Assembly (NCBI RefSeq): GCF_026571515.1
Contig: NW_026866507.1
Coordinates: 124,001-188,000, forward strand
From: Ruditapes philippinarum
Lineage: Eukaryota
Length of the DNA: 64,000 nt
Reading direction: 5' to 3'
The notes beneath the pieces were generated by a model. That model saw only the letters and a list, made by a program, of their open reading frames with translations. It did no database searches and was not told the DNA's origin. Made by a program: the position numbers and the translations under genes. Positions 15,178 to 59,439 of the stretch are shown in pieces. How positions within the stretch are numbered: the stretch's first letter is position 1; each line of letters starts with the position of its first letter.

Positions 15178-18100
15178 TCAGGTTATCTTTTGCATTTTCT
15201 TCTTAGATTGCTTTGAATGTCTTCCAGCCTTGAATTTCTGAAACGATATACATGTATATACATACAACACATGCATAGAAAAGTTATGACTTAAACTTAT
15301 GTTTCAAATCAAAATTTTGAAATTCAAGTTTGACCTTGAAGATAAAGTTCATTTCTGATTGACAGTGCAAAATCAAACTTGAATGATGAGAGTAGAGTTA
15401 ATGGCTACAGGTATGTTCTGGGTATATTCTGGGCATGTTTTGTTCCTATCATGGCTCTAGCTTATATGATGATGTTACACACAAGATTAACATTATCTGC
15501 CGCAGATTTTCTCCTGCTACATGTTTTATATCTGCAATATGTGATTTTAATAACAAGAGGGCCATGATGGCCCTAGATCGCTCACCTGAATTATCAAACT
15601 CATCCAAACAATTACCTAGACAAGCATTCTGACCAAGTCTCATGACAGGTGAGTCAAAAATGTGACCACTAAAGTGTTAACAAGGATTATCCATATTTGA
15701 GCAGTGTGACCTAGTTTTTTACCCAGGTGACCCATATTCAAACTTGACCTAGAAATCATCAAAACAAACTTTCAGACCAATTTCCAGGATACTTGGATCA
15801 AAACAGTAGCAACTAGAGTGTTAACAAGATTTTTCTATTTTTAGCTCCGGTGACCTAGTTTCACATGCGATTTCGAACTCATCCAAGCAATTACCTAGAC
15901 AAGCATACAGACCAAGTTTGATGATAATGGAGTCGAAAATGTGACCACTAGAATGTTAACAAGGTTTTTCCATATTTGGGCGGTGTGACCTAGTTTTTCA
16001 TCCAAGATGACCCATGTTCGATCTTGACTTAGAAATCATCAAAACAAACTTTCAGACCAATTAACAGAATATTTGGATCACAACAGTAGCCACTAGAGTG
16101 TTAACAAGATTTTTCTATTTTTAGCTCCTGTGACCTAGTTTTTCATCCGAGATGTCCCATGTTCGATTTATTCCCAGCAATGACCTAGACAAGTTTCCTG
16201 ACCAAGTTTGATGACAATTGAGTCAAAATTGTGACCACTAGAGTGTTAACAAGGTTTTTCTATTTTTAGCTCCTGTGACCTAGTTTTTCATCCGAGATGA
16301 CACATGTTCGAACTCATCCGAGTTATTACCTAGACAAGCATCTTGATCAAGTTTGATGATGATTGATGCAAAAATGTGACCGCTAAAGTGTTAACAAGGT
16401 TTTTCTATTTTTAGCTCCGGTGACCTACTTTTTCATCCGAGATGACCCATGTTCGAACTCATCCAAGCTATCAACTAGATAAGCATCCTGACCAAGTTTG
16501 ATGATGATTGATGCAAAAAATGTGACCGCTAGAGTGTTAACAAGGTTTTTCTATTTTATAGCTCCGGTGACCTAGTTTTTCATCCGAGATGACCCATATT
16601 CGAACTCATCCGAGCTATTATCTAAACAAGCATCCTGACAAAGTTTGATGATGATTGGGTCAAAAATGTGACCACTAGAGTGGTCACAAGGTTTTTCTAT
16701 TTTTAGCTCCTGTGACCTAGTTTTTCATCAGAGATGACCCATGTTCGAACTCATCCAAGCAATTGACTAGACAAGCATTCTGACCAAGTTTGATGATGAT
16801 TGGTTCAAAAATGTGACCTCTAGAGTGTTCACAAGGTTTTTCTATTTTTAGCTCTTGTGACCTAGTTTTTCATCTGAGATGACCCATGTTCGAACTCATC
16901 CGAGCTTTCAACTAGATAAGCATCCTGACCAAGTTTGGTGATGATTGAGGCAAAAATGCGACCGCTAGAGTGTTCACAAGCAATTGTGGACGGCCGGACG
17001 GACGACGGACGACGGACATTCATCGATCCTAAAAGCTCACCCTGAGCAAGCTCAGGTGAGCTAAAAACTGAAATTGGCAAAGGTTTGACTTAATGCTTAA
17101 GTACAACATGATTATAGACATCCTGCTCAGTTTGGTAAGATTCTTTTCTTCTTATATATCAGTAAAATATTACAGCAAGCTATTTTATATGAGCAAACTC
17201 ATGCATGTTTTTAATGTATTCATTAAAATCTTACATTGATAACAAACCAAATAAACATTAAACTTTAGGGGATAGAACACAAAGTCAATTTTAAAACATA
17301 TCACAGGAAAATTTGCATTCTTGCACCACCCAACCTGTCCTGATAAGTTCAGCATAAAAATATTTATTGGCCAGTGAATATAAAAATAAGTTCAAGTTAC
17401 TAAAATATCTGATAACTTTTTTTTCAGAATAAGATTTAGGAACATACATTTCTTTTCTGTCCTCTCTGTTCTGTATCAGTTTTATTTGGAGATTGTTTGA
17501 TATTTTCTGTTTCCATTTCTTCAAACTCAAAATCAGAATCATCATCTTCATCTACCTGACTACCACCAGCTACTTCCCCGTGCTCAACCTGATCCTCTAA
17601 AGTCACTTTATCAGCTGCTGAAATACACATCATATCCAGTTACTATACAGTATTTGACACTACTCTTAGTAAATTAACTCTTATTTCATTAATAAAGAAA
17701 ATAGATATGTCAAATTTAAGGTGTCTCATTTTTGACACCACCTGCATGACTAGTAAAATATTTGTAGAGGTGTGCTAGGAAATGCTTCATTTCAAATATC
17801 TAAGCTCTGAGCATTGTAGTTTTCTGCAGGGTTTTAAATCTGTTAATATCAGCCACTAAGTTGACTACCAGGACATAGTAGTTTTGACCCTAGGGAGCTA
17901 CAATGTGATGCTATCTTTAAAATACTTCTGTACTGGGCTTCGTTGTTTTAAATAAGACTTTAAAGACTTGTAAACTACATTTTATGCTAATTAAAAAATA
18001 AATCTATGTAAACTAAATGACACCAAGGTTAACCATTTTGACTTTACGCACATGTACATATGCATTAGACTGGAAACATTCATAAAAACTTTTGCATTTA

Positions 18101-21100
18101 GTTTGGATAAAAAGCACAAATGTTGTTTATTTAGGATGTCATGTTAAAGAAATTGCCAAACAAGGGAGGATCAGCGCAAAACTATCACAAAAGCTCACTT
18201 TCATGCTCAGGAGAGCTAAAAAATACTAGGTTTGACTGAGACCACATAAAACCTGTTTTCCAGTAGTTTTATAAAGACTGGGCATAAAAATTACCTGGAT
18301 ATAGATCACTTAGACTGTCAGTATCACTTATCTCCCCTTCATCATCCTCTCCACCTTCCTCCACAGAGTAAGCTCTCTTTCTCAAATCTAGATTTTCCTG
18401 AACTTTCCTTCTACCTCTTGGTGGACGATACTCTTTCCCAGTTCTCTGGCATTCCTCCCCTGGAAAATGTTCAATTATGCAAAAACTTAGTTAGATGCAT
18501 AACACCCTCAAGCAGGTTCAACTAGACCTATCACTGAAGGTGATTAATACCCCCACCAGCAACTTTGACTTTTTGAAAAATACGTGGTCTAAAGAAAATT
18601 TGAACACAAGCTATAGTAAATGAAGTATCAACTGTGTACAAAGAATTATTTCAATTAATTTCAATAACCAGCCGGGGTCTTCATATAAGCTTGCTATACA
18701 CCAAGTTTGATTACAATATCTCATTTCTAACTCTAGTTATTGTTTGGAAACCATTTTTCTATATTTAGTAATGCTGACCTTGACCCCAGGGGTTCAAAAT
18801 GCAATACCAAACAGGGTCTCCACATATGGTTGCTATATACCAAGTACAAAACCTCATTCCAAACTCTAATTATCCTCCGGAAACCATGCTGTGGACAGAC
18901 CGACAAGCTGACTCCTATATACCCCCCCCCCCCCAAAAAAAAAAAAAAAAAACTTTGTTTGTGGGGGTATAATTAAAAGCTGGTTCATTTGTCAACATTT
19001 ACATATAAGTGACATGCATTGCATAAAAAAATCCTGTAAGTATAGATATTACAACAAAAGCCTGAGTCAGTAACCAATTTGCCAAAACGGTTCATCCAGT
19101 CTCTCAACTATGGGAGGGGAGTCTGTTCAATAAAATTTGTTAACAAAGTTATATTACTTTACAGACTTGTGTCTTTATTTTTATTCGAAAAAAAATGTTA
19201 ACTGGCATGTTTGCTATTTGATGATGTTAAACAATTCCCAAAGAAAGCCGTTGAACTAGGTGACCTCAAACCCCACCTATGTTGTAAGACCAACAGTTAA
19301 TAGGGTACATATTTTTGTATCTTACTACCAAGTTAATGAAAGAAATTAGTCAATACTAGTAACTCAGACCTGTACAAGCTTAAGTGTAAAAATATATTTT
19401 TAAGCACCAGTGACCTTGATCCCAGTAACTCCTAACTCCATACTAAGGTAGAGAACTACCAAAGGTATGTTTTTTTATGAGAGGCATCAATTAATAAATA
19501 AAGTCTGTATGAGCAAAATGGTAAAACTAGTGACCTTAACCATGACCCCTGTGACCTAAAATTACACTCAAAGATTAAGGACGATGACCCAAGGTTTCTA
19601 CCAACCAAATATGAAAGACTATAGTCAATTAATGAAGTTGATTGGAGAACTTAAGATATATTAAACTTGCCAGAATACTAGTAGGTTAAAACATATCAGG
19701 TGATAAAAAGGAAAATAATTGTGGAAAAATTGATGTAACAATTATGATACTTTATACTTATAAGAGTGTGTAATATACAAATTTTGGTATAGATAAAGTT
19801 TTAGATGTATTCATTTTTCTTCAAAACAGTTTAACCATACTTAGTTACAAAGTACTTTAAAGAGAAATAACTGGGGAAAATGGAAACCAAAGTTATGTAA
19901 CTTGCCAAGATTATGAACTTTGTATTGTGTGTAAATTATGAAGTCTTTGGTACAGGAAAAATCTAACAGGCTGGTGGATGTTAACCTTGTCCAGATGAGT
20001 AGACAGATGGATGTTATATAATATATAATAAAACACTTTATGCTGGGAAACATAAAAATTTGTTTAACCTCACTTTATGCTGGGGAACATAAAAATTTGT
20101 TTAACCTATCTGCAAGTAATCACTGAATCCATGCATTTTACAATTTGATAGAAAGTTACAGCTTTGGTAAGAAGGCATGATGCCATATCATATGACATTC
20201 AAAGCATCCAATTTGTATATCTTTATGCTAAAACTTTTAACACAGCACAACATGAAACAATTTTAGTTGTGTTTGATTTAACATAAAATTATGGTTTGAT
20301 CTAATGGCATAATTCAAATCAGAAAATTACTTTCAATTGTTGCTTTGCCATACAAGCAAACAGTATTTTTGATACTCAACTCATAAAATATCCTCTTTAT
20401 ACTTCATAAAACATTTGTAATCTATTACTCACATCTTGCCAAAAATCTCTTGAATTTTCCTCCATTAACATGTCTTTCTACATGAGCTAATGTCTTATTT
20501 ACATGACACATTGTCAGTGTACAGAATAACTGGTGCCTGAAAGTAAATGTTGACACATGGTCAGTGTATAGAACAAATAGTGCCTGAAAGTAAATGTTGA
20601 CATGTGGTCAGTGTACAGAACCGCTGATGCCTGAAAGTAAATGTTGACACATGGTCAGTGTACAGAACAAATGGTGCCTGAAAGTAAATGTTGACACATG
20701 GTCAGTGTACAGAACAAATGGTGCCTGAAAGTAAATGTTGACACATGGTCAGTGTACAGAACAATTGGTGCCTGAAAGTAAATGTTGACACATGGTCAGT
20801 GTATACACCAAATGGTGCCTGAAAGTAAATGTTTGTTTGTTTGATTTGGGTTTTACGTCACATCGACACAGTATAGGTCATATCGCGACGTTCCAGCTTT
20901 ACTGGTGGAGGAAGACCTCAGGTGCCCTTCCGTGCATTATTTCAGGCAGGAACGGGTACATGAGTAGAACCACCGACGTTCCGTAAGCTAGCTGGATAGC
21001 TTCCTAACATGAAAGAATCCAAAGTCCCTGTCGGGATTCGAACCCACAGCGGTGAGGGGCAAGTGGAAAGTAAATGTTGATACATGGTCAGTGTACAGAA

Positions 21101-24100
21101 CAACTAGTGCTGGTGCATGAAAGTAAATATTGACACATGGTCAGTGTACAGAACAACTGGTGCCGTAAAGTAAATGTTGACAAATGGTAAGTGCACAGAA
21201 CAACTGGTGCTGGTGCATGAAAGTAAATATTGACACATTGCCAGTGTACAGAACAACTGGTGCCGGTGCATGAAAGTAAATATTGACACATTGCCAGTGT
21301 ACAGAACAACTGGTGCCGTAAAGTAAATGTTGACAAATGGTAAGTGCACAGAACAACTGGTGCATGAAAGTAAATGTTGACATGTGGTCAGTGTACAGAA
21401 CAACTGGTGCCTGAAAGTAAATGTTGACATGTGGTCAGTGTACAGGACAACTAGTGCCTGAAAGTAAATGTTGACATATTGTCTATGTACATAACAAATG
21501 ATTCCTGAAAGTAAATGTTGACACATGGTCAGTGTACAGAACAAATGATGCCTGAAAGTAAATGTTGACACATGGTCAGTGTACAGGACAACTGGTGCTG
21601 TAACATGGTAAGTGTACAGAATAACTGATGCCTGAAAGTAAATGTTTACACATGGTCAGTGTACAGAATAACTGATGCCTGAAAGTAAAAGTTGACACAT
21701 GGTCAGTGTACAGAACAAATGATGCCTGAAAGTAAAAGTTGACACATGGTCAGTGTACAGATCAACTGGTGCCTGAAAGTAAATGTCAACACATGGTTAG
21801 TGTACAGAACAACTGGTGCCTGAAAGTAAATGTTGACACGAAAATAAATGTACAGAACAACTGATGCTGTAATATGGTAAGTGTACAGAATAACTGATGC
21901 CTGAAAGTAAATGTCAACACATGGTTAGTGTACAGAACAACTGGTGCCTGAAAGTAAATGTTGACACGAAAATAAATGCACAGAACAACTGATGCCTAAA
22001 GATAAATGTTGGCACATGGATTGGTAAGTGAACAAGTAGTGCCTACTTTTATTAAAATGTTGTTATCAGATTGTCATGAACTGTCATGCATTTGTATTTA
22101 AACTAAGCAAGATGTTATGATAATTTCTCATTAAAAAGCTACTCACTCATGATGTTTCTTTGTGCTGGGTACCAGATGAGGCTTGTACTTCTCATAGTTT
22201 TTGTCCTCTCTTTCCAAGAGTTTTATGTACTTCTTCCCGGTAACATAACTTCTGATAGCTTCTTCCTTATATGGCATCTCATGACCAGATAGTGAACATG
22301 TTACCTGTAAATAGAAATTTGGAAGTATTTTAAAATTAAAAGTCTATTAGTTTAGCTGTGATTTGAAACTAATTTTTTAGCGATATATACAGATAAAATA
22401 TGAAATAATCTAACATTAAAATTAAATCTTTCAAAAATCGAAGGACACTGGAGATAAGTTTTACTTGTTTCCTATCTTATTATGGTTTCCCTTCAAATTG
22501 ATATTCTGAATCCCTTGCCTAAAATTACCGTCAGTCCAAATATGAAGTTTCTCGAACAAACTTTTTTCTAAAAATGGAGCTCTTAGCATGTTCAAGATCT
22601 TCTGATGAATTAATCATAAAAAACGTTAAATTTTGATTGATTCAAGTACACAGTTTATTATTTAATAAATTACAGTCCAAATAATCTTATTTATACAGAA
22701 CTTATCCAGATAATATAGAACTAGACCTATCACTGAAGGTGATTAATACCCCCACCAGCAACTTTTTGAAAAATAAGTAGTCTGAAGAAAAATTTCAACA
22801 CAAACTATCAACTGTGTACAAAGAAATATTTCAATTAATTGTAATCCCAACTGGGGTCTCCAAATAAGCTTGCTTTTCACAAAGTTTGATTACAATATCT
22901 CATTCCTAACTCTAGTTATTGTCCGGAAACCATTTTTCTATTTTAAGGAATGGTGACCTTGACCCCAGGGGGTCCAAATGCAATACCAACCGAGGTCTTC
23001 ATATAAGCTTGCTATACACCAAGTTTGATAACAATATCTCATTCCTAACTCTAGTTATTGTCCGGAAACCATTTTTCTAATTTTAGTAACGGTGACCTTG
23101 ACCCCAGGGGGTCCAAATACAATAACAACCCAGGTCTTCATATAAGCTTGCTATACACCAAGTTTGATTACAATATCTCATTCCTAACTCAAGTTATTGT
23201 CCGGAAACCATTTTTCTATTTTTAGTAACCATGACCTTGACCTTGACCCCAGGGGCCTAAATGCAATACCAACCCAGGTCTTCATATAAGCTTGCTATAA
23301 CGCAAAGTTTGATAACAATATCTCATTCCTAACTCTAGTTATTGTCCGGAAACCATTTTTCTATTTTTAGTAACGGTGACCTTGACCTTGACCCCAGGGG
23401 GTCCAAATGCAATACCAACTGGAGTTTCCACATAAGGTTGCTATATACAAGTTTGATTACAATACCTCATTCCAAACTCTAGTTATCGTCCGGAAACCAT
23501 GATGTGGACCGACCGACCGACGACCGACCGATTACAATATCTCATTCCTAACTCAAGTTATTGTCCGGAAACCATTTTTTCTATTTTTAGTAACCATGAC
23601 CTTGACCTTGACCCCAGGGGGCCTAAATGCAATACCAACCCAGGTCTTCATATAAGCTTGCTATACGCAAAGTTTGATAACAATATCTCATTCCTAACTC
23701 TAGTTATTGTCCGGAAACCATTTTTCTATTTTTAGTAACGGTGACCTTGACCTTGACCCCAGGGGGTCCAAATGCAATACCAACCGGAGTTTCCACATAA
23801 GGTTGCTATATACCAAGTTTGATTACAATACCTCATTCCAAACTCTAGTTATCGTCCGGAAACCATGATGTGGACCGACCGACGGACGGACGGACGGACC
23901 GACCGACCGACAAGCTGACTCCTATATACCCCCCCTAAACTTCGTTTGTGGGGGTATAATAAATAGAAAATAGATGCCGAGTCAATATCAACTTCCGGTA
24001 GGTTCCTGATTCACGATATCCTATTCTTGAAATGGAATTGTTAATCCTGAAATTTGATTTAGAATTTGGAAGGGATTTTATTCTGAGATAGGGGAAAAAT

Positions 24101-27100
24101 ACATATGATTTCTTTGAGAGGGGAACAAACTGTTAAAAACTTGTTAAAAATAATTTTAATATATATTATTCTCCTCATATCAAAATCGAGTGACGTCACG
24201 AAATGGAGTCAGCGACAAACTCAGATCGCGGGAAATAATCAGAAAATGTTGAATTATTCCTACATAGCTATGCGATTTTAAACAAGAACTGTCGGAGGAC
24301 AGTAAAGCTCGACTATTCAAAATTTGTCACAAGGGTGTTTCATTGAGTATAATAATGCTTACCTATATGAATACATAAAATTGTCCGAAAAGGTACAAAC
24401 TCTTCAAGTTTCAATACATTCCCTTCAGTAGTTATGGAGATACAAGCTTACATACAAAAACTTAACCAAGATTTTCTAAGTCGAAAAAGGGGCATAATTA
24501 TGAAATAAAACAATTCAGAGTTATGGGACTTGTACCAATCACCTTAGATAATCACAGAGACCAAGTGTGTGAAGTTTCAATCCATTCCCTTCAGTAGTTA
24601 TGGAGATACCAACTTACACGCAAAAACTTAACCAAAAATTTCTAAGTCGAAAAAGGGGCATAATTATGTTAAAAAGCAAATCCGAGTTATGGGACTTGTG
24701 CCAATCATCTAAGATAATCACAGAGAACAAGTGTGTGAAGTTTCAATCCATTACCTTCAGTAGTTATGGAGATACCAGCTTACATGCAAAAACTTAACCA
24801 AGAATTTCTAAGTCAAAAAAGGGGCATAATTATGTAAAAAAGCAAATCAGAGTTATGGGACTTGTGCCAATTATCTTAGATAATCACAGAGAACAAGTGT
24901 GTGAATTTCAATCCATTCCCTTCAGTAGTTATGGAGATACCAGCTTACACGCAAAAACTTAACCAAGAATTTCTAAGTCGAAAAAGGGGCATAATTATGT
25001 AAAAAAGCAAATCAGAGTTATGGTACTTGTGCCAATCGTCTTAGATAAACACAGAGAACAAGTGTGTGAAGTTTCAATCAATTCCCTTCAGTAGTTATGG
25101 AGATAACAGCTTACATACACAAACTTAACTAAGAATTTCTAAGTCGAAAAAGGGGCATAATTATGAAAAAAAGCAAACCAGAGTTATGGGACTTGTGGCA
25201 ATCATCTTAGATAATCAGCAGAGAACAAGTGTGTGAAGTTTCAATCCATTCCCTTCAGTAGTTATGGAGATACCAGCTTACACGCAAAACTTAACCAAGA
25301 ATTTCTAAGTCGAAAAAGGGGCATAATTATGTAAAAAAGCAAATCAGAGTTATGGTCTTGTGCCAATCGTCTTAGATAAACACAGAGAACAAGTGTGTGA
25401 AGTTTCAATCAATTCCCTTCAGTAGTTATGGAGATAACAGCTTACATACACAAACTTAACTAAGAATTTCTAAGTCGAAAAAGGGGCATAATTATGAAAA
25501 AAAGCAAACCAGAGTTATGGGACTTGTGCCAATCATCTTAGATAATCACAGAGAACAAGTGTGTGAAGTTTCAATCCATTCCCTTCAGTAGTTATGGAGA
25601 TACCAGCAGCTTACATACAAAAACTTAACCAAAGATTTTCTAAGTTCGAAAAAGGGCATAATTATGAAATAAAACAATTCAGAGTTATGGGGACTTGTGC
25701 CAATCATCTTAGATAATCACAGAGAACAAGTGTGTGAAGTTTCAATCCATTCCCTTCAGTAGTTATGGAGATACCAGCTTACATACAAAAACTTAACCAC
25801 AGGGACGCCGACAAATGGGTGACTGCATTAGCTCGATTATTCTGCGAATAGTCGAGCTAAAAATCATAGGTGGTATTTGATGCATTTATGTATTGTTTAT
25901 CGAAATGGCCCGATAGATTATTTTGATCTATTGTTTTGTTGATTTGTTCGGCGTAGATTATGTTGGGGTGGGGAAAAGGCATTTCATTCCTTGTGTTTAT
26001 TTATACAGTCTAGGGGGTATATTTTGGATATTATCATTAAAATTGATAGAATTTCAAGTTCCTGTGCTAAAGCAAAGACAGTGTTCCTTTGGCCTGTATA
26101 GTCGCATGGATTTTTTGCCAGAGAAATGAAATGTGTTGTTTTGGGTCTTGGGTCACCGTCAGTGATTTTTCTCGCTTAATTGGGAAAAATTATCGCTAAA
26201 ATTGCCAATTTGGGAAGAAAAAAGCATGTTTCAGTTCAGATTTTTGGGAAAACTGCATGATTTTAAAGAAAATTTCAATTGGGAAGTGGCCCTTTTCCGG
26301 AGTCTGTTATATATGTAGGAAAATCACTGACTGTATATTTTGGGCTTCAACTGAATGAATTGCAACTTTTTTGACTGCCTGCCTATTGCAGATGGGATCA
26401 TTTAAGAATCCGGGTCAGCTCGGCCCTAAAACGTACTCGGCCCCCGAGTCAGCTCGGCCCTTTTCCAACTCGGCACGGGTCAACTCGGCCCACTTTTCAA
26501 TTATTAATATTTAGGTTTGTGTTAACACTATTTATTGTAATTATTGTAATTATTTATAATACATGCACGGATTGACAGTTTCGAACTAGCAGCAGGCAAG
26601 CTTTTCTTATCAGTAGAATTGCGAGTAAAGATAACCAATAGCGTATCTCACTGTATTTCTACATATTTAACTTCTGTTCTGTTCTTTATTACTTTAACGT
26701 TCTAGATAATGCACAGACAAGGTCTTTCTATTTGATAGAAGAAAAAAAAACGTATGACACATGCAAATAAATTTCGGCAACAATCAATGCGCTTATACGG
26801 AAGATTTAATTAGAAGCTTATGTCATGATATTAAGTAAACACGTTTTTGTTTAATTTTTTAAATATTATTTTACAAACACATTTTATTAGAATCTACATC
26901 TATATTAATTTTATCGAATCTGCAAGACAGATAAATAACATTTTTTTCTAAATATACTTTATTTCAGAAGAAGTACAATGTATGTGAATAATTATATAAT
27001 AATAAGATATTTCTTATTATTCATTTACCTTAACAACATGCAAAGCAAAGTTAAAACGTTATATATACTTTTGCAAAGTGGGCCGAGTTGACCCGTGCCG

Positions 27101-27450
27101 AGTTGGTATAGGGCCGAGTTGACTCTTTTCCTCATTTTATTGTAGATTTGCAATCTTATGTCGTATATGTTCTCAACAAAATGTGTTTTCTTTTTCTAGG
27201 TTGTGTAGTTTGGTATGGACATTGACGGCAGGAACTTGAAATTAACTGTGGAGCACTACCTCAAGTTAAATTGAATATCAGATCTGTCGCGAATACATGT
27301 GACAAATGTAAATTGCCGATTATTAGGATGTCTTTGTTCTATAAGAAAATAAAATTATAATATATAAATTAGCAGTGTTACCTTTCCAGTCACTTCGCTA
27401 TAGTTTAAAGAAGGGTGGTCAGTAAGAAGTGATTTTAATTTCTTTGACAT
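15178..27450 (-). CDS. SURF2: Surfeit locus protein 2, complete, 6 coding exons, 241 aa
   Basis: Exons (minus): 27450-27382 MSKKLKSLLTDHPSLNYSEVTGK; 22304-22147 VTCSLSGHEMP..YVTGKKY..PHLVPSTKKHH; 20536-20433 HQLFCTLTMCHVNK..HVERHVNGGKF; 18459-18295 WEECQRTG..SDTDSLSDLYP; 17617-17448 acidic; 15237-15178 basic tail and TGA. All GT-AG and phase-compatible, 726 nt. Motifs match SURF2 as I recall it (HPSL, CxLxGHE, GKKY, PHxVPSTK, HQLFCxLT, EECQ, DLYP). AATAAA at 15144-15139. Confidence 0.92.
15553..17063 (-). mobile_element. HINE/pearl-like element with ~10 x ~145 bp internal repeats, SURF2 intron 5
   Basis: ACAAGAGGGCCATGATGGCCCT hairpin end, subterminal GCTCACCTGA, terminal palindrome AGCTCACCCTGAGC-AA-GCTCAGGTGAGCT, GACG microsatellite; GTGACCTA recurs at ~145 bp spacing 15706-16857. 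Confidence 0.85.
17700..18220 (-). mobile_element. Old degenerate HINE remnant
   Basis: Ends AAAGCTCACTTTCATGCTCAGGAGAGCTAAAA, a decayed form of the palindrome at ~17033-17063; scattered TTTGACC monomer remnants. Confidence 0.45.
18521..18973 (-). mobile_element. Short HINE, same family as 22720-23960
   Basis: Same end ACTAGACCTATCACTGAAGGTGATTAATACCCCCACC, ~1.5 monomers, GACC/GACA microsatellite, GTTTGTGGGGGTATAAT terminus. Confidence 0.8.
20504..22045 (-). repeat. 47 bp minisatellite made of the SURF2 intron2/exon3 junction (~28 units)
   Basis: Unit (minus) ACATTTACTTTCAG|GCACCAGTTGTTCTGTACACTGACCATGTGTCA; junctions at 20536 (true), 20583, 20630, 20677, 20724, 20771, 20818, continuing after a SINE to ~22040. 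Confidence 0.95.
20834..21065 (-). mobile_element. 5'-truncated tRNA SINE (V-domain/RUDI-like) inserted in the minisatellite
   Basis: B box GGTTCGAATCCC, body GGAAGCTATCCAGCTAGCTTACGGAACGTCGGTGGTTCTAC...GAAATAATGCACGG, (AAAC)n tail, 13 bp TSD GAAAGTAAATGTT (20821-20833, 21066-21078). Family name is from memory of the V domain. Confidence 0.85.
22720..23960 (-). mobile_element. HINE with ~140-147 bp internal repeats, SURF2 intron 1
   Basis: ACTAG end with hairpin ATCAC-TGAAG-GTGAT, subterminal ATACCCCCAC inverted at far end (GTGGGGGTAT), monomers with GACCTTGACCCCAGGGG, GACC/GACG microsatellite present twice. Confidence 0.85.
24282..25859 (-). mobile_element. HINE with ~9 x ~166 bp internal repeats, SURF2 intron 1
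   Basis: ACAAG end with hairpin ACTGTC-GGAG-GACAGT, subterminal AGCTCGACTATTC inverted in terminal palindrome AGCTCGATTATTC-TGC-GAATAGTCGAGCT; CCTTCAGTAGTTATGGAGA recurs at ~166 bp spacing 24421-25752. Confidence 0.85.
26160..26329. mobile_element. 170 bp MITE with CAGTGATTTT TIRs
   Basis: CAGTGATTTT...AAAATCACTG; internal TTGGGAA repeats; flanks ACCGT/ACTGT. Confidence 0.55.
26405..27131. mobile_element. MITE with repeated AACTCGGC(C/A)C subterminal motifs
   Basis: Left (A/G)CTCGGC x5, right inverted GCCGAGTTG x3; CCAACTCGGCACGGGTCAACTCGGCCCACTTT is inverted at the right end; flanks TCATTTA/TCATTTT. Confidence 0.75.
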
Positions 27451-28009: not shown

Positions 28010-28646
28010 GACTGACTCACTTACTCTCTCACTCACTCACTAGTTTAACTAACTTACTGACTGACTGACTGACTGACTAACTAAATAACCCAACTAATAA
28101 CTAATCCAACTAACTAAACTAACTAACTAACTAAACTAACTAACTAACGATCTAACTAACTGACTGACTGACTGACTAACTAACTAACCCAACTAACTAA
28201 CCCAACTAACTTACCCAACTAACAAACTAACCCAATTAACTAACCCAACTAACTAACTAACTAACCCAACTAACTAACTAACCCAACTAACTAACTAACT
28301 TACTAACTAACCCAACTAACTAACCCAACTAACTTACTAACTAACCTAACTAACTAACTAACCCAACTAACTAACTAACTAACTTACTAACTAACAAACC
28401 CAACTAACTAACTAACTAACTAACTAACCCAACTAAATAACAACTAACTAACTAACTAACACAACTAACTAACTAACTAACAACTGACTAACTAACTAAC
28501 CAACAATCTAAATAACCCAACTAATTAACTATAACTAACCCGCTAACTTACCGGCTAACTAACTAACCAATCCACTAACTGACTTACTAAGAACTAATTA
28601 ACTGACTGACTGACTGACTAACTGACTGACTGACTGACTGACTGAC
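28010..28646. repeat. Compound microsatellite (ACTC/ACTG/ACTA/AACCC)
   Basis: Direct reading of tetra/pentanucleotide runs. Confidence 0.95.
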
Positions 28647-38487: not shown

Positions 38488-41400
38488 TAAGTATGATGAC
38501 ATTGCTATCGCGAAACTGTAGGTTCGAATCCTCGATAAACTATTTTTTTTATATTTTTTTTTGTAATTATATGCGACATTATTGTATAAATTATTTGATT
38601 ATTTCTCGGTATTTTTTTTTAATTAAACATGTATATGCCTTAGTAATTTTACATAATTTCAATATGTAATGTCGTATAATGGGTGATTGGCATGTAAAAA
38701 ACATAGTAATCAAGTTTCGAAAAATAAAGAAAAGAAGAAAAAAAAAACAATGAAATAATGTTTCACTAAGATTCAAATTAAATCCGAAAGTTTTAAGTCA
38801 TTGTCAGTGAGACTTTTTCGGCAAGTGTTTTGTTACTAACGTTAAGTTATACGTTAACCATGTTTACCGTTATGCCATACTTTAAAATTCGTAAGACTGC
38901 TTCGGAATACGATAATCGAAAAAAAAGTCATTGAATATTCAAATGTCTCAGGACAATAGTATCATTTAATACACTGTAAGTGTAAATGTTAAAGAATAGA
39001 ACAAATCTTGAACGCCTATTTGCAACAGATATTGAACGCCAAGACGCGTTCTATTTCTTAATATTAGTGTTCAATTTTTGTCTCCAACTGTTCATATATT
39101 AACGCCTAATGAACATCTAGTGTTCAAATTTTAACGTTGACGTTAAAATCCTAACACAAAACCATTCCATTAAAGAATATGTTGTGAACATTCAGGTGTT
39201 CTACTTTAAAATGCCAGACGCGTTCAATTCCGATGCAACAGATATTGAACGCATAGAACACGGAGAAATCATATTAAGATTTATTTAATTATTTTCAGTT
39301 ATTCACAATAACAAAATGAATAATGTTATTCAAAATTTCTTATTTTTTCTAACTCTAAGCCTTATAAACAGTTATAAAGAAAAAATATCTAAAAGACTTT
39401 AACAATTATGATTAGAACACATTAACATAAATTATGTTTTACAAAGTCCTTACGGTAATTTTTAGTACATGTTAACTTGTGAGAGTCTTGAAAACATAAA
39501 CAATAAACAATGTTTTATGTCGAAAACAAAGTTAATTTCAAGTCACTGAATTTTAAACACAAACAAACACTATCCACAGCAATTGTCCTCTCCTCTGAAT
39601 ATCATCAGTTTGTGTGGGGTGTTTTCATTTGTCTCTATAAATTTAGCTGGAAAATCATCTTCTTCGTTATCCTGGAAAATATAAATAGAAATTATTTACA
39701 TGTACATAATTTATATTTCCAACACTTGCTAAGTATTTGATTGTTCTATCCACATAGGTATTCATAGATATTTCAAGGGATCAACAGAACCGTATAAGTT
39801 AAAGACAGTACTTATATAAGAGTAAGACCAATGTTGGAATTTAAATATTGTCGAATCTATTGTATTGTTTAAGAAAACAAACCTCAACGATCTGTATGGA
39901 AGTCCTGAAATTACATCCCCTTCTTATTTCTGTAAGTATTTTGCTCCAGTTTCTATAGATCTATACAGCAGTTCAAGGCGTTCAGCACTTCTTGTTCCAC
40001 AACAGTACTTACTTACTAGCTATCCTATTAAAATATAAAGCAACACAAATAATTATATATCATTTAAAGATCTACATACAGAATTTAAATAATTAATTAA
40101 TCTTAGCAGACTGCTCAGAAAAAATCTACATTCTCACATAGATCTACATGTATATGTAGAATTAGGTCTAGATTCTACTCCTTGTAAAAAAAATAAAGAG
40201 ACACGTTATGCCATTGTGAACTACAACATATCGACTAAGTTCTAAACAAACACATAAATCCATTTAATAAAAATAAAATGTATGGATAAAAAAGATGCTA
40301 ATGAAGTGTATGTTACTTCTTAAAAGTTTATACCGTATTTTTCGTCAGCTTTATTTTCGTTGTTGTTGTTGTATTTAATGTGCCCTCGTGCGGATGCTAA
40401 TTATGACGTCACAAATCTTTTTTAGACACGTTCTCAATTAGAACATCCAGGAACTTGTATATCTATCATACTTAAATTCTATACCCTGTTGTTTCCGAGA
40501 TGATTATGGACAATCGACGTGAGTTCCAAATAAAAATTTTCGCATGTACGCGACCCATTCCAGCTTAAGACTGTACATGATTAAAGTTTATGGAGAAAAG
40601 TGCAACGGATACAACTAGAAATTATTATTCGGGTTAGTTACAGAAGCAGAGGATCGAACTTCCTAGGGTGAAACAAATAAAGCATTATATTTGGAATGTG
40701 TTAAAGTTGACAAGCAATAGATGGATGAATATCTCATTTAAAATATATTAAAATATTTATCACTCTTGTGATGATCTAGCTGTGAGTTTCATTATATTTT
40801 CAGCTGAAGGTCAATGTACAAGCGATACAAGGCCCCTCGTTTTAAGTTCATCCAACTCCATCCAATACTTCTCCTCTCCAGCGTATCCGGCTGACTATCC
40901 TCCGTATGTACTTTACCAAAGTCTACTCGTAGGCGTTTATCTGAGTAGAGTTAGTAACGATATCCAGGGGTTGGTGGTTTGACCCTCAGGAGATGTGTAA
41001 TTTCTCTGAATGAGTGTAACGGTCATTTGTCTCTCAGTGCTTTAAAATTGAGAACTCATGTGAGATTATCAGTTGGTCACAATTTGAGAACTTGGTAATT
41101 ACTGGCAAGTTATCCAGGAAAGCCGGGTATGTGGATCCTTCCCCGAGATATGACCCAAAATGTGTTAAAAATAATTAAACAAACAAACATACATAATTGA
41201 TTTTTTCGTCATTCATTTCAGGGTTTTATCGAAAAGAACAATTCTAGTGTTTTAATCACACTAGAGTTATTTAATTCTTTCTTTTTTGACAGAAAATATG
41301 TATTACGCTTTATGAGTATTCAACTGATTTTACGGGAGAGTCATTCCTAATTAAGTCATTGCCGCGGAAGTGTTATTGTGACGTGTACAATCATAGCAAA

Positions 41401-41790
41401 ATACATATTCAGACCCTACATTAAAATCTAATGACTTTCCGCTTCATAATCATAGTTAATGAGATGCGTGTTTACTTTATCCCCCGGGTTACTTCTTTGT
41501 GATATCATTTAAATATTTTCACCAGGAATGCGGACTGTACCTGGCACATACAGGCCCCGAATGAATACGACAAGATTATTTTGAATGTAGAGCTGTTCCG
41601 TACACAACAAGATGAGTTTCTCAAGATATATGATGGCGGTAAATAGTTTCCATAGTTAACATCATGTTTTTAGATATATAATTTCTTTGTAATGCCTTTT
41701 TATTTCTTGTTCCAGATGATAATTTATGTTTGAGCTTTAAGTATAATGTTATTGATTATCTGTTATAATTCTAAAGTAGTTAATTCTGTT

Positions 41791-42007
41791 GGTTTATACA
41801 AATTTATTTTAGTTTGATTGTATTGGAAGCTATAAGCTTATAGAAACACTCTCAAATCCGTTCCTGGAACCAACCAGTACTAAGCAATGAATGTAAAGTT
41901 TCTTGCTCAAGGAAACAACGGCTTGCCCCTGACAGGGTTTGAACCCATGCGTTAAGCAATCCTTAGATTGCTAGTCCGACGCGTTAACCACTCGGCTACG
42001 CCGCCAC
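41791..42007 (-). mobile_element. Full-length tRNA-derived CORE-like SINE
   Basis: Minus: GGCGGCGTAGCCGAGTGGTTAA (A box), GGGTTCAAACCC (B box), GTTTCCTTGAGCAAGAAACTTTAC (CORE-like); 11 bp TSD TTAATTCTGTT at 41780-41790 and 42008-42018. Confidence 0.85.
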
Positions 42008-42815
42008 TTAATTCTGTTTAAATCTGTAAACTATCTTTTACTAGACTAAACCCGTGTTTCGAGACAGGGAACTTCGAGTCGCGTGTCTTACATGTATTTA
42101 TTCAGTGAGTTCGATCGGTTTTGATTTATGTTCAGGAACTGTGACTGGAACACTATTGGCAGAGATAGATGATACAAATCAGAAACAGTCCAATGCATTT
42201 GTTAGTCCTGGTGATGAACTGTATTTCACGTTCCAATCTGACGGGGAAAATGAGGCTACTGGTTTCAATATTCTTTTCTTCTCGAATCAATCAGGTATAT
42301 GTGTATGTCAAAATTACCTAATTTATTGCGTATTATCATTAACCTGATATGCATTTACACCATTACACTATTCTTAAACCATTGATAGGCAATGACGAAA
42401 ATTAATTATCTTACATCATTGCTGAAAACAATCATTTCAAAATCAAATCAAGTACAAGTACAATGTCCAAATCATTGAATAAAAATAAACTCGATTCATG
42501 GATGAAAAACACATTTGTACATGTATTGTAATTTTCTTTATTGTTAGTTATCCAATCATATAACGAAATACAATGTATAATATTTTATTTAAGCCAATCA
42601 GCATGCGTGTGGCGAGACTATAACAGTTTCATCAGCACCACAGATATTTATGTCCCCGAATTTACCAAATCAGTTTACAGCGTAAGTACAAGCTATACAA
42701 AAAAGTCAAAAAAGATATTTTATTATTTACTAAAGTATTTCTTTATGAAACATGCATAACGTTATCACATTTCATTTTATAGAGGTGATGCATCTCTTAA
42801 AAATCATTAGCTTTC

Positions 42816-43420
42816 TACCGTGACCCAAATTCGGCGTTCTCCTAAATTCGGCATTGTTTTGTTTTTCATCATTCACGTGAGATTTCAGAGGTGAAGGTCA
42901 ATCATGTTTATGTCCCACGGTCTATTTTTACAACTCCAGTGATTTTCTGCGCTAAATATGGAGATACGGCTGGTAAACATTAAAAATTGTATATGACATG
43001 GAGAAAATTGTGTGTTTTACCTGATGCAATTTTAAGTTTATATATACTTTCCTCTATTTGATTGATGTTGTTGCTTAAAATAATTTGACAGTCGCCGTTT
43101 TTATCTAATATTAAACTAACTATTTTTACTGCCGATCTAGGTCAACATACTACGTCACAATCCCGCCAAAATAAAAAAATTACTGCAACCAATCAGAGTC
43201 GCCGAATTTAGGTGACGTTTTCAGATCGTAGTAAGATTTTACATCAGCCATATATGTTTATATTTGGCAACCCCTGAACGATTACATTGTTAGAAATCAA
43301 TTTCAAGTAATTTTTAAATATTTGTAGTAAAATTATATCAAGTATAATTATATATTACTGTAATTTATTGAAAATGCCATTGTCATTTGTTCTTATATCG
43401 CCGAATTTAGGTTACACCGG
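42816..43420. mobile_element. MITE (Tc1/mariner-pogo-like TACCG end)
   Basis: TACCGTGACCCAAATTCGGCG with repeat CCTAAATTCGGC; inverted GCCGAATTTAGGT at 43201 and ~43400. Confidence 0.6.
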
Positions 43421-43513
43421 GATACTGACACAATGGGAAAATCTTTGATTTCAGCGACGATGGTTGTAATTGGCTTTTCACATCGGCCAGTGGAGCCATT
43501 TCGTTTCAGATAT

Positions 43514-45312
43514 TTTTGGCTTGCAGCCACGGCTGCAAGCCCATTTGTTTTGGAAAACTTGTTCCGGTTAGGTGGTTTCCTGCTTACATTTGTTAGTGCA
43601 TGATTGAACGAGAAACCAACTGCAATCGTGCCAATCGCAACTTTTTGGCCCTTTCCGTCACTCTTCGGTTTAATGATTATAGCCGATGTAGTTCCGATTG
43701 CAATCGTGACAATTCGGGCGATTCCGTCATACTGCGGAATCAGACGAGGTAATATTACGGAAATCTAAGCTATTTTAGTTACTTCGGTAATCCCAGTTTG
43801 TTTATATAAATAGGATTCCTATTTTTACTTGATTTATCGGTTTAAACCGTAATAAATTATAAACGAAATTGTTACGTTTCAATTCTTTTTCAAGACGCAA
43901 AAGTTAGTTTCTTTTATAATTGTTTTTGTCTGTATTAGTTTTGTATGTTAATTGACATATATACCTTATACAATAGAGGATGGTTACGTCTCCAAAGGGT
44001 GGTCTTGCTTACCAAATCACAGAGAATATTAGTGCATGATCGAGTTATATTTAGATCTAATGAACGCAGTAAGGTAATCTAAAAATAGCCCATGCATATC
44101 ATTAACCTTACCGTATCTGTGGTTGTGTAACATAGTTGATACATGCTTATTAATTGGTACCACGTAACGAAGTATTTTAGTGCATTTACTTGTCCATAAA
44201 GATGCTATATAAATGAAATTAGCAACTGCCAAAACGAATGATTTCTCTTGAAATGAAATGTTCCTTGTGACCCCGATGTCTTTTTGCCTTGTATAAGTAA
44301 AGAACAAACTGAGGGTTACTGGTTCATCAATTTAATTTGTAGTGGACACTAGCTTTATATATAATTCCAATTTGGTACATCTCAACATCAAACATCATAT
44401 GTCATACATCATACAACATACACATCACAGTTACATCACATCTACATCACATCTATATCACATCTATATCACATCTATATCACATCTATCAAGCCCTGAA
44501 AGTATAAATACCAAACATCCCATACTATCATGAAATATATATAGTTTTATACATTTGTATATACTACAGTACCTTAAATATACGTAATCTAATATTCTAT
44601 CAACAGATCAGTCTATAGGGATAGACCATTCATTTTATCTCATGTAAATAAATCATGTACACATAAAGTACATCTTTTAATGTATTACATCATATTGTAC
44701 CTGCATCTAGTGACCACTTAATCATTTACTTATAAAACAATATACATTATGTTCAACTTAAGAAATACATATAGCTCTAAAAATATATAAACAATAACAT
44801 ATAAATATAATATAACATACCAATTGTGGATCAGACTCTGTAAATATACCTCTGTCACTCACACCTGTCTCACTGTGCTGTTAATTATGCTGTAAACTGT
44901 AATTTACAAACATCAGTGCAATACAAATAGAAACAGTGATTTCTAGGAATAACTATATTAAAGATAAGAACATATGCTGCCATCTTGAATTCTAACACTC
45001 AAGAACAATACAAATTTATCAAAATAACTTTTATCAAATCCACAACTGTATTTAATTACTATAAGTCTTCATTTAGTTGACATTAGAACTTTTAAGAACA
45101 AATGAATAAAAGAAAAGAATTGTTTCCTTTTCAGTATGATAGAATAGTTAGTATTTTTATGATTGATTATTTTCTTTACAAGTTTTATACAATAGAGAAT
45201 AGATTTCAAATTGTTTTGACAAAAAAATATTCGTTTTTACAAAAAAAAAACAACTAAATAAACACTTTATGAAGGCACAACTGTGCAAGCCTTTCCTTTT
45301 AAAAGGAAACTT
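43514..45312 (+). mobile_element. Helentron-like element inserted at a TT inside a CUB exon
   Basis: 5' T-run then palindrome GGCTTGCAGCC-AC-GGCTGCAAGCC; 3' TGCAAGCC then hairpin TTTCCTTTTAAAAGGAAA; removal restores an open CUB exon. Confidence 0.8.
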
Positions 45313-45570
45313 TATTCATGGATATGGCCAGTTGTAAAACGGAGTTCCTATCATTCTATATGGGCAAGTCAGTTTTGATTATCACTTCCGCATTTTTGCT
45401 TAACATCATTCACTATTACATTGTTATAATTGTGACAGCTGAAATCTAACAGGAACTTTTGTAAGAAATATCTAACGTTATGTTAAATGTTCATAGAAGT
45501 GCAAACTCGTTTGAATAACATCTTAACTAAATCTCAAATAGCCGTTGTCTAATCGGTATTTTGTAATTTC

Positions 45571-45773
45571 TGTAGTCTTATTTCGTCATTTCGGTATCCT
45601 TTTCCTCATCACTTCAAAAACACATATCTCATAGTTTGTGTAGTCCCTTCTATTTTCATTTCTGTAACTTTTCCCTCATCACTTCAGTAACAGTTACCTC
45701 ATAGTTTGTGTAATCCCTTATCTCGTCATTTGTGTAACCTTTTCCATATCACTTCAAAAACATTTATCCCATA
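45571..45773. repeat. ~70 bp minisatellite, 3 diverged copies
   Basis: TCATTT...ATCACTTCA...CATA recurs at ~68-70 bp spacing. Confidence 0.75.
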
Positions 45774-47004
45774 TCGGCCACTACTAGAACCACTATCCAA
45801 TCATTCCGGTTCCTTTATCTTGGAATTTCAAGAACCGTTATAGCATCGTTTTAAATGCGTATATATGATCATTTCAGGGACCTCTTCTGACAGCAACTTG
45901 CTTGTTCAGGAATGTGAAACAGCCTTTGTATATGAATTTCCTGCAATTAGTACTACCGGTTCTAATGCATATGTAGAATGGACAGTAAGCCAAGACGCTA
46001 TTGGATACGGTTTCATGTTTGCGTTCCTGCAAGGTGTTGGTAATTTTATTCTTGTACTTGTAGAAAATATTGAGTCTAAAACAGGCTGGCGAAATTATTA
46101 ACAAATTATAGCATCCTGCCTTCAGATGGTAAAAAATGAAATGAAATAAAATAAGAAAAAATGATAACAAAAAAATTAAAGTAAACGATAAATCTATCTT
46201 TACTGAAAGAAAGAAGGTTGAAAAAACTGTCAGTTATTTGTGCTTCTTCGTAGCATAATCTTTTGCGTTACTTACGCAGTAGCCGATATAAATAGAAAAG
46301 ATTATTTATTCAATGTGGTCACGTGTCGTAATAGTGGTTGGGAAAATTTCCAGGGATTTGGTACGCCCTTTCCACGTATTTCAATTTTAGTTAATGTTCA
46401 GGCTGGTACTAGTATATTGCTCTTATCATATTTCAAGCTAAAATTAAATCAATATTCCTGTCAATATGTTTTATGATTTTATGAAATTATTAATCAATAA
46501 AAGAGACTTATTATTCAATACAGCTCTGTGTTAATATCAATAACTTTAAGTGCAACATATTACGACAAATATCAAAGCTAAAGCGGTTTCCTCATTTCCC
46601 GATTCCACGTCCCGTGCGTTCAGTATCACGCATTCCATCTCGTGGTACATTAAATAAATAATCGTGATGAAAAAGACCGTAGTATAATAAAAGAAGCCAG
46701 GTCAGGGCTGGGAATCAAAAGTGCATCCTTAAATGTAAACAAACGCCGCCATCTTGGAACGAAAAAGGTATGTTTTTGTTGTTACTCTTTTTGTTGGAAA
46801 TGACTGAAAACAAGATACCCGGTATATCTATTAACGCGGTCCACTATTTCCGCTATGTTTCTGAATTTATTTGATATCTTTCTATCTTCAAGTTTAAATG
46901 ACTATCAGATTAACTCATTTCACTGTCGCGAATACATGCGACAAATGTTAGTTTTCAATTATTACGATGACTTTGTTCTATAAGATATGAATTAACAGTG
47001 TTAC

Positions 47005-47078
47005 CTTTCCACTTCGCTATAGTTCAAAGAAAAATGGTGATCTGTTAGCAGTGATTTTTAAAATAAATTCTTTGACAC
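47005..47078 (-). pseudogene. SURF2: Decayed copy of SURF2 exon 1
   Basis: Aligns with 27382-27450; ATG changed to GTG, indels present, donor AAG|gtaac retained. Confidence 0.8.
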
Positions 47079-47108
47079 TTTCACGTGTTTCTATTTATTT
47101 AGTTATCT

Positions 47109-50399: not shown

Positions 50400-51200
50400 C
50401 CTGATACAACAACAGCTGCTCCGGATACAACATCGGCAGCAGCTCCGGATACAACAACGGCGGCTGCGGGCACGACAGCAGCTCCGGATACAACATCGGC
50501 GGCAGCTCCAGATACAACAACGACGGCTGCGAGCACAACAGCTGCTCCGGATACAACAACGGCGTCTGTGGGCACAACAGCAGCTCCGGATACCACAACG
50601 GCATCTGCGGGCACAACAGCAGCTCCGGATACCACAACGGCGTCTGTGGGCACAACAGCAGCTCCGGATACCACAACGGCATCTGCGGGCACAACAGCAG
50701 CTCCGGATACCACAACGGCGTCTGTGGGCACAACAGCAGCTCCGGATACCACAACGGCAGCTGCGGGCACAACAGCAGCTCCGGATACCACAACGGCGTC
50801 TGTGGGCACAACAGCAGCTCCGGATACCACAACGGCGGCTGGTGGCACAACAGCAGCTCCGGATACAACAACGACGGCTGCCGACACAACAGCAGCTCCG
50901 GATACACAACAACGACGGCAGCTCCGGATACAACAACGGCGGCTGCGAGCACAACAGCAGCTCCGGATACAACAACGGCGTCTGTGGGCACAACAGCAGC
51001 TCCGGATACAACAACGGCGTCTGTGGGCACACCAGCAGCTCCGGATACCACAACGGCATCTGCGGGCACAACAGCAGCTCCGGATACCACAACGGCATCT
51101 GCGGGCACAACAGCAGCTCCGGATACCACAACGACGGCTGCAGGCACAACAACAATTCCAGATGCAACAACGACAGTTGCGGGCACAACAGCGGTAGCAG
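50400..51200 (+). repeat. Coding 39 bp tandem repeat (TTAAPDTTTA[S/A][V/A]G mucin stalk)
   Basis: GCAGCTCCGGATAC recurs mostly at 39 bp spacing within exon 50377-51364. Confidence 0.92.
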
Positions 51201-59369: not shown

Positions 59370-59439
59370 CATCGTCGGATACCCACTGTTGATTAACATG
59401 ATAAATGTTAATAGTTCGGCCGTGGGTATCCCATCATGC
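59370..59439. mobile_element. Second, decayed copy of the 895-977 hairpin MITE
   Basis: CATCGTCGGATACCCAC...CCGTGGGTATCC. Confidence 0.6.

What the first reader, a model, noticed from the sequence alone, without database searches (positions are those of the whole stretch)
20433..22146. SURF2 intron 2 is a ladder of decoy splice acceptors copied from its own exon 3 junction
Seen: the 47 bp unit is exactly 14 nt of intron end (ACATTTACTTTCAG) plus the first 33 nt of exon 3 (encoding HQLFCTLTMC). About 28 units fill all but ~100 bp of the 1.6 kb intron, and roughly 17 upstream units keep an intact ACTTTCAG|G. Only the last unit continues into the exon. I translated use of the decoys at 20583 and 20677: both hit TGA (..GTA CAC TGA) within about 24 codons. 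Established: exon definition favours the acceptor nearest the downstream donor, and premature stops trigger NMD. Inference: either the spliceosome rejects many near-identical acceptors purely by position, or the array is a copy-number-tunable unproductive-splicing (or stepwise re-splicing) device on a housekeeping gene, and it shows a route of intron growth by splice-site amplification. I do not know of a description of this at SURF2, but cannot search the literature.
Basis: partly seen in the sequence, partly recalled or inferred. Interest (0 to 1): 0.85.

Follow-up and report, generated by a model that had tools for sequence, protein, structure and literature searches.

The report
Splice-junction minisatellite in clam SURF2
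Intron 2 of the Manila clam SURF2 gene has been inflated by about 27 tandem copies of its own 3' splice junction; this is a real "mirage" minisatellite, a repeat type already described in amphioxus, and nothing yet shows that it regulates the gene.

Summary
The window is Ruditapes philippinarum. SURF2 lies on the minus strand. Its 1610-nt intron 2 (22146..20537) holds 27 upstream copies of a 47-bp unit made of the last 14 intron bases plus the first 33 exon-3 bases. Seventeen copies keep ACTTTCAG|G, and all 17 would give a premature stop.

About 86 nt of the intron is unique. The array occurs nowhere else in the 1.4-Gb genome. A related bivalve has the same intron, 379 nt long, with no array, so this is lineage-specific intron growth from the exon junction.

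This kind is already known: "mirage" minisatellites of amphioxus (Adh3, globins, PGBD5, TnC), with human F7 IVS7 as the donor-side mirror image. In those cases only the exon-adjacent site is used. Both RefSeq protein models here also use the last unit.

Stepwise re-splicing is excluded, because no donor is regenerated (AG|GCAC).

This scan has already noted the same kind of array at ten or more other places in this genome. Verdict: a new member of a known kind, most likely a tolerated by-product.

The parts
22147..22304 (-). SURF2 coding exon 2 (158 nt, ends ..CATCATGA|gtgagt; phase 2 donor)
   Evidence: Pfam SURF2 PF05477 positions 22-73, E 6.3e-16; identical to residues 24-75 of XP_060575139.1
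20537..22146 (-). Intron 2, 1610 nt, GT..AG
22061..22146 (-). Only non-repeated part of intron 2 (86 nt after the donor)
21066..22060 (-). Distal block of the array. It holds 21 units with higher-order repeats of 80-221 bp. Eleven units have intact ACTTTCAG|G. A run of six units (21377-21078) has lost the AG at the site (CAT or ACG). It ends with the 12-nt 5' piece of the unit split by the SINE (21077-21066).
20833..21065 (-). 5'-truncated tRNA-derived SINE with an (ACAA)n tail, in sense with the gene, inserted in one unit. ACATTTACTTTC is present on both sides.
   Evidence: At least 1787 candidate copies in the genome, the 40 scored copies 94-98% identical; alignment A1
20551..20832 (-). Proximal block: six near-identical decoy units, all with ACTTTCAG|G and CTGAC 25 nt upstream (89-98% identical to the consensus)
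20560..20564 (-). CTGAC, the likely branch point of the genuine acceptor (A at 20561, position -25). It lies in the exon-derived part of the last decoy unit.
   Evidence: Motif scan; its use as branch point is inferred
20504..20550 (-). Genuine junction unit: 14 intron bases, then AG|, then the first 33 bases of exon 3 (HQLFCTLTMC). It differs from the array consensus at two synonymous sites only.
20433..20536 (-). SURF2 coding exon 3 (104 nt). Its unique 71 nt are purine-rich (63%) and end in the donor AGAT|gtgagt.
   Evidence: Pfam SURF2 positions 73-105, E 2.1e-9
15178..27450 (-). Whole SURF2 coding region: exon 1 27450-27382, exon 2 22304-22147, exon 3 20536-20433, exon 4 18459-18295, exon 5 17614 (or 17617)-17448, exon 6 15237-15178
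   Evidence: tblastn of P0151 on the window and splice-site check

Best explanation
This is a 'mirage'-type minisatellite: a tandem repeat whose unit is a copy of the host gene's own intron-exon junction.

Origin (inferred). A 47-bp duplication spanning the 3' splice site of a short ancestral intron 2 was amplified by replication slippage and unequal exchange. That produced 27 upstream units, later higher-order duplications and one SINE insertion. The intron grew to 1610 nt.

Why it was tolerated (inferred). The exon-derived part of each unit happens to carry a branch-point motif (CTGAC, or CTAAC in some units) 25 nt upstream of the next AG. Every unit, including the last decoy that now precedes the real exon, is therefore a complete 3' splice-site module.

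Splicing.
- Shown only through the RefSeq protein models and protein conservation: productive mRNA uses the exon-adjacent acceptor.
- Inferred: that choice is anchored by the purine-rich unique part of exon 3 and its strong donor (exon definition).
- Inferred: any use of a decoy adds 47n nt, meets a stop within 2-149 codons, and is expected to be removed by NMD.

The array has no dedicated function. It is a tolerated, probably length-variable by-product in a very repeat-rich genome.
For: - The array and its register with the true junction are confirmed.
- The gene is the single-copy SURF2 of Ruditapes philippinarum, and the window exons equal XP_060575139.1 and XP_060575138.1. Both join ..KKHHE|HQLFCTLTMCHVNK at the last unit.
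- The unit is confined to this locus.
- A relative, L016, has the same intron position and phase, 379 nt, with no array. L015 shows no array in the 375 nt after exon 2.
- All 17 decoys give premature stops.
- CTGAC or CTAAC lies at -25 in 14 of the 17 decoys and in the real site.
- The consensus unit differs from the exon only at synonymous sites.
- The kind is published. Amphioxus mirages duplicate splice sites without aberrant mRNAs (PMC3087553, PMC3902484). In human F7 IVS7, 5-9 identical donors exist and only the exon-adjacent one is used (PMC1557585).
- The scan's earlier notes list the same kind at ten or more other places in this genome (these are leads, not checked here).
- Ten tandem arrays lie in this 64-kb window, four of them in SURF2 introns.
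Against: - No RNA reads could be examined, so how much splicing goes to decoys is unknown.
- By local sequence the six proximal decoys are indistinguishable from the real site from -47 to about +6.
- Two distal decoys (AG at 21901 and 21773) have a better branch point (CTAAC). They would make short introns of 246 and 374 nt, which intron definition should favour. Appreciable mis-splicing is therefore plausible.
- The intron-derived 14 bases are not less conserved among units than the exon-derived 33 (0.94 against 0.90). There is no sign that decoy signals are being erased.
- The recurrence of such arrays in this genome could reflect a process aimed at junctions rather than chance.
Confidence: 0.75

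Rival explanations
1. Regulated unproductive splicing. The decoys are used at a set rate, the products are destroyed by NMD, and copy number tunes SURF2 output.
For: All 17 decoys yield premature stops. Their signals equal or exceed those of the real site. The acceptor core is well kept among units.
Against: - The array is absent in a related bivalve, so it is not a conserved regulatory element.
- Only true-junction isoforms are annotated.
- The same kind of array sits in many unrelated genes of this genome.
- In published mirages no aberrant mRNA was found (PMC3087553, PMC3902484).
- A run of six units has lost its AG and was itself amplified.
Confidence: 0.08
2. The decoys are a cost, not a device. 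Seventeen acceptor and branch-point modules with no donor of their own bind U2AF/U2 unproductively, which slows intron removal or causes intron 2 retention.
For: Complete 3' modules without any credible donor in the unit. No RNA structure hides them: the fold is weaker than shuffles, z = +2.4.
Against: No RNA data. The gene is single-copy and its protein is conserved, so a strong defect would be selected against.
Confidence: 0.1
3. Assembly artefact: the array, or its length, is produced by mis-assembly of a shorter repeat.
For: Amphioxus mirage loci have been mis-assembled in a draft genome (PMC3087553). The six proximal units are nearly identical. No reads could be laid on the region.
Against: Units differ by up to 40% and form distinct higher-order blocks. 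A SINE is inserted cleanly in one unit. There are no Ns. The existence of the array is not in doubt; only the exact copy number could be wrong.
Confidence: 0.05
4. Stepwise (recursive) re-splicing through the ladder of acceptors.
For: None beyond the repeated acceptors.
Against: Recursive splicing needs a donor regenerated at the new junction (AG|GTRAGT). Here the base after every AG is G followed by C (AG|GCAC), and the GTs inside the unit are poor donors.
Confidence: 0.02

Closest known systems
'Mirage' minisatellites of amphioxus (Adh3, globin BflGb6/BflGb9, TnC, PGBD5; Canestro et al. 2002 as cited in PMC3087553; PMC3902484)
   Same: The tandem repeat unit spans an intron-exon boundary of the host gene. 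The copies carry splice signals. The genuine junction is the terminal unit. Normal mRNA uses the genuine site. The acceptor-side type (BflGb6) is the same arrangement as here.
   Different: The host is a bivalve mollusc and the gene is SURF2. There are 27 upstream copies against 3-6 in BflGb6. The unit is short (47 bp). Length polymorphism and RT-PCR evidence are lacking here. A SINE is nested in the array.
Human F7 intron 7 37-bp VNTR whose first unit spans the exon 7 donor (PMC1557585)
   Same: A boundary-spanning minisatellite gives several identical splice sites in a row. Only the exon-adjacent one is used, although the pseudo-sites are functional when tested.
   Different: It is the mirror image: donors downstream of the real site, not acceptors upstream. 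It has 5-9 sites against 17 here. It was tested experimentally, whereas usage here is only inferred from gene models.
Intron gain or alteration by internal tandem duplication (Rogers model; PMC3265369, PMC4974935 by title and abstract; PMC2812944)
   Same: Tandem duplication that includes splice signals reshapes an intron.
   Different: No new intron is created. The intron position and phase are ancestral (L016). An existing intron is enlarged about fourfold.
Alternative 3' splice sites coupled to NMD (regulated unproductive splicing); from general knowledge
   Same: The upstream acceptors would all give premature stop codons.
   Different: There is no evidence of use, no conservation, and no known autoregulatory factor.

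Membership tests
Mirage (exon-intron boundary) minisatellite | Head-to-tail minisatellite array inside a gene | tested here: met
   47-bp period, 27 upstream units plus the genuine one, TRF score up to 1094
Mirage (exon-intron boundary) minisatellite | The unit is a copy of the host gene's own intron-exon junction, and the terminal unit is the genuine junction | tested here: met
   Unit = 14 intron nt + 33 exon nt. The true unit is 45/47 identical to the consensus. The exon part encodes the conserved SURF2 motif. The unit is absent elsewhere in the genome.
Mirage (exon-intron boundary) minisatellite | Many copies keep the splice signal | tested here: met
   17 units with ACTTTCAG|G
Mirage (exon-intron boundary) minisatellite | Regular mRNA is made from the genuine site | tested here: inconclusive
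   Both RefSeq protein models and orthologous proteins fit the last unit. No reads or cDNA could be examined.
Mirage (exon-intron boundary) minisatellite | Length instability or polymorphism | not testable with these tools
   Only one copy of the locus is in the assembly.
F7-type boundary VNTR | The first unit spans the exon-intron (donor) boundary, with pseudo-donors downstream | tested here: not met
   Here the last unit spans the acceptor boundary. It works like F7 in mirror image but is not the same arrangement.
Recursive splicing site | Acceptor directly followed by a donor (AG|GTRAGT) so that a 5' site is regenerated | tested here: not met
   Every unit reads AG|GCAC or AG|GCAT
Regulated unproductive splicing (AS-NMD) | The alternative site gives a premature stop | tested here: met
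   All 17 decoys do
Regulated unproductive splicing (AS-NMD) | The alternative junction is seen in RNA and raised when NMD is blocked | not testable with these tools
Regulated unproductive splicing (AS-NMD) | The alternative site is conserved in related species | tested here: not met
   L016 intron 2 has no array
Intron gain by tandem duplication (Rogers model) | A new intron at a position that is intron-less in relatives | tested here: not met
   The same intron position and phase occur in L016, and exon 2 ends at the same point in L015

The most novel reading that the evidence does not exclude
Two readings are not excluded.

(a) With 17 acceptors as good as or better than the real one, a fixed share of SURF2 pre-mRNA is lost to NMD or to intron retention. 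Array length would then act as a heritable, fast-mutating dial on SURF2 dosage.

(b) The many junction-derived arrays of the Manila clam genome reflect a mutational process that targets splice junctions, not mere chance in a repeat-rich genome. That would make this clam a natural library for studying 3' splice-site choice and intron growth.
Probability: 0.1. Interest if true: 0.65.

Novelty: new member of a known kind. Interest (0 to 1): 0.3.

Why it matters
This is a clean natural experiment on 3' splice-site choice. Seventeen complete acceptor and branch-point modules, identical to the real one or better, lie upstream of it, yet the gene model uses the last. It is the acceptor-side counterpart of the F7 intron 7 system that was used to study donor choice.

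It also documents, with an outgroup, an intron that grew about fourfold by amplifying its own splice junction. It extends 'mirages', so far described in amphioxus in the papers I could read, to a mollusc. As a single locus without RNA data it adds an example, not a principle.

Tried and rejected
The Mercenaria mercenaria SURF2 locus (P0001) could therefore not be fetched to see whether the array is shared.
- A search for short protein fragments carrying exon 2 (possible decoy-spliced or intron-retained ORFs, 29-91 aa) found no candidate. This says little.
- L003, a weak SURF2 hit elsewhere in the genome that might have been a retrocopy preserving the spliced junction, is only a low-complexity repeat.
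- RNA structure masking the decoys is rejected. The proximal block plus exon 3 folds less well than shuffles (z = +2.4).
- Rfam found nothing in the whole gene, so no intron-hosted small RNA explains the array.
- A dispersed satellite or transposon origin of the unit is rejected, because it has only self-matches.
- Slippage between flanking direct repeats as the origin: only a 2-nt in-register match (CA) can be reconstructed at the decayed distal end, which is not informative.
- The bacterial promoter scan is irrelevant to this genome.
Exons were searched one by one by reference. The only joined reading was a local frame translation in a script to find stop codons.
- Literature. No paper on SURF2 in Ruditapes and none on such arrays in bivalves in the held library. 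Canestro et al. 2002 (PMC117041) is not held and is cited only through PMC3087553.
Full report
**What is there**

The gene lies on the minus strand. Reading 22400..20200 shows exon 2 ending ..CATCATGA|gtgagt at 22147. A long run of near-identical 47-nt units follows. Exon 3 begins after ..acatttactttcag| at 20536 and ends AGAT|gtgagt at 20433.

Tandem Repeats Finder gives a 47-bp array over 20504-22019, with higher-order periods of 80, 94, 128, 141, 174 and 221 bp. The low end of the array lies 33 nt inside exon 3.

An anchor search and a MAFFT alignment of the units give 27 upstream units plus the genuine junction:
- 21 units are distal. Two of them lack the 14 intron-derived bases, and the two outermost are degenerate.
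- 6 units are proximal and nearly identical (89-98% to the consensus).
- Six further units carry other AGs.
- A contiguous run of six units (21377-21078) has CAT or ACG in place of CAG. Its alternating pattern shows that two or three mutations were then amplified as a higher-order repeat.

At about 20833-21065 the array is interrupted by 234 bp that are not repeat units. This stretch has at least 1787 candidate copies in the genome, and the 40 scored copies are 94-98% identical to it. Alignment with three copies (A1) shows a tRNA-derived SINE with a B box and an (ACAA)n tail. It is 5'-truncated here and in sense with the gene. ACATTTACTTTC is present on both sides, so it was inserted into an existing unit.

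The intron (1610 nt) therefore consists of 86 unique nt, about 1290 nt of units and 234 nt of SINE.

**Identity of the gene and the organism**

- Exon 2 and exon 3, searched separately by reference, match Pfam SURF2 at positions 22-73 (E 6e-16) and 73-105 (E 2e-9).
- The family occurs once in the 1.4-Gb assembly.
- A scan of 1.84 billion representatives with the exon 2 peptide, followed by a search with the best full-length hit, led to XP_060575139.1 and XP_060575138.1. These are 'surfeit locus protein 2-like isoform X2/X1 [Ruditapes philippinarum]'.
- tblastn of that protein on the window gives six coding exons, identical apart from residues at the junctions. All have GT-AG borders, and together they make 723 nt = 240 codons plus stop.
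- The two isoforms differ by one alanine from a CAGCAG tandem acceptor at exon 5. Both join ..KKHHE|HQLFCTLTMCHVNK, that is, at the last unit.
- Orthologues from Mercenaria, Mactra and others read through the same junction.

**Direction and age of the event**

- The exon-derived part of the consensus unit encodes HQLFCTLTMC, the conserved SURF2 motif. It differs from the present exon at two synonymous sites only.
- The unit matches nothing else in the genome.
- Two metagenome contigs carry SURF2 of other bivalves.
  - In L016 the intron sits at the same position and phase, is 379 nt long, and has no tandem repeat.
  - In L015 the 375 nt after exon 2 show no repeat.

So the intron is ancestral and short. 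The array is a lineage-specific amplification of the junction, and the intron grew about fourfold.

**Consequences for splicing, from sequence**

- Joining the exon 2 donor to any of the 17 decoys gives a premature stop.
- The unit holds only 14 intron bases, so the original branch point was not copied. The exon-derived part, however, carries CTGAC (CTAAC in two units) with its A 25 nt upstream of the next AG. This holds in 14 of the 17 decoys and in front of the real site, where the A is at 20561.
- Each unit is therefore a full 3' module, and the real acceptor must now use a branch point made of former exon sequence. This would explain why the first duplication was viable. It is an inference.
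- From -47 to about +6 the six proximal decoys cannot be told from the real site.
- What differs lies downstream. The unique 71 nt of exon 3 are purine-rich (63% against 45% in the repeated part) and end in a strong donor. That fits choice by exon definition.
- Against this, the decoys at 21901 and 21773 have a better branch point and would give short introns of 246 and 374 nt. Some mis-splicing is plausible.
- No RNA structure hides the decoys (z = +2.4).
- Re-splicing step by step is excluded. Every junction would read GA|GCAC, and no good donor lies in the unit.

**What is known**

- The human F7 gene has a 37-bp minisatellite in intron 7 whose first unit spans the exon 7 donor. Five to nine identical donors follow. 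All are functional when tested, but only the exon-adjacent one is used (PMC1557585).
[quoted passage not shown] These include acceptor-side arrays (BflGb6). They are length-variable and do not disturb normal mRNA (PMC3087553; PMC3902484).
- Internal tandem repeats at exon-intron boundaries also reshape introns of human paralogues (PMC2812944).
- I found no paper on SURF2 in this clam, nor on such arrays in bivalves.
- The scan's own notes list the same kind of array at ten or more other places in this genome: ABCA, an aminopeptidase, GABARAPL2, a CTD phosphatase and others. All were filed as mirages. One of these notes gave me the word 'mirage', which I then checked in the papers. I did not check the other loci.

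**What could not be done**

- A search for short protein fragments found nothing.

Decoy usage, intron retention and length polymorphism therefore remain untested. The statement that the last unit is used rests on the RefSeq models and on protein conservation.

**Verdict**

The origin by junction amplification is supported. The regulatory reading is unsupported, and re-splicing is refuted. This is a new, large, mollusc member of a known kind of repeat. It is most likely a tolerated by-product in a genome where tandem arrays are everywhere: ten lie in this window, four of them in SURF2 introns. Its value is as a natural test case for 3' splice-site choice.

Noticed in passing
window 20833-21065 (-): 5'-truncated copy of a very abundant tRNA-derived SINE with a B box and (ACAA)n tail. 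The genome holds at least 1787 candidate copies, and the 40 scored copies are 94-98% identical to it. Its insertion inside the array shows that the array predates it.
   Followed up: partly
window 17614-17620 (-): CAGCAG tandem acceptor (NAGNAG) at exon 5. It explains the one-alanine difference between RefSeq isoforms X1 (241 aa) and X2 (240 aa).
   Followed up: yes
window 22855-23866, 24406-25799 (intron 1) and 15597-16980 (intron 5): Large tandem arrays with 139-168-bp units in other SURF2 introns. A related sequence also lies in intron 3 (about 18600-18970), so these look like a dispersed element that forms arrays, unlike the locus-specific intron 2 array.
   Followed up: no
window 28046-28643: (TAAC)n microsatellite of about 600 bp (146 copies), about 600 bp upstream of the SURF2 start codon at 27450.
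   Followed up: no
genome G000, contigs C9238 and C6022: The only SURF1 (PF02104) matches lie on other contigs. The head-to-head SURF1-SURF2 pair of vertebrates (from general knowledge) is apparently not kept in this clam. The two equal hits may be haplotigs or a duplicate.
   Followed up: partly
L016 4196-4533: The related bivalve has a 42-bp x 8 minisatellite (97% matches) in SURF2 intron 3, about 150 nt after the exon 3 donor. It does not span a junction.
   Followed up: no
window 20504-22019 (+): Read on the plus strand, many units contain ATG|GTCAGT or ATG|GTAAGT, which are good donor-like motifs. No antisense gene or exon was seen.
   Followed up: no
window 50502-51192: A 39-bp repeat in the stretch 40804-60412 that another first-stage note (s1-804712) reads as a CUB/cadherin-like gene with a Thr/Ala mucin stalk. 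Whether the repeat is coding was not checked here.
   Followed up: no
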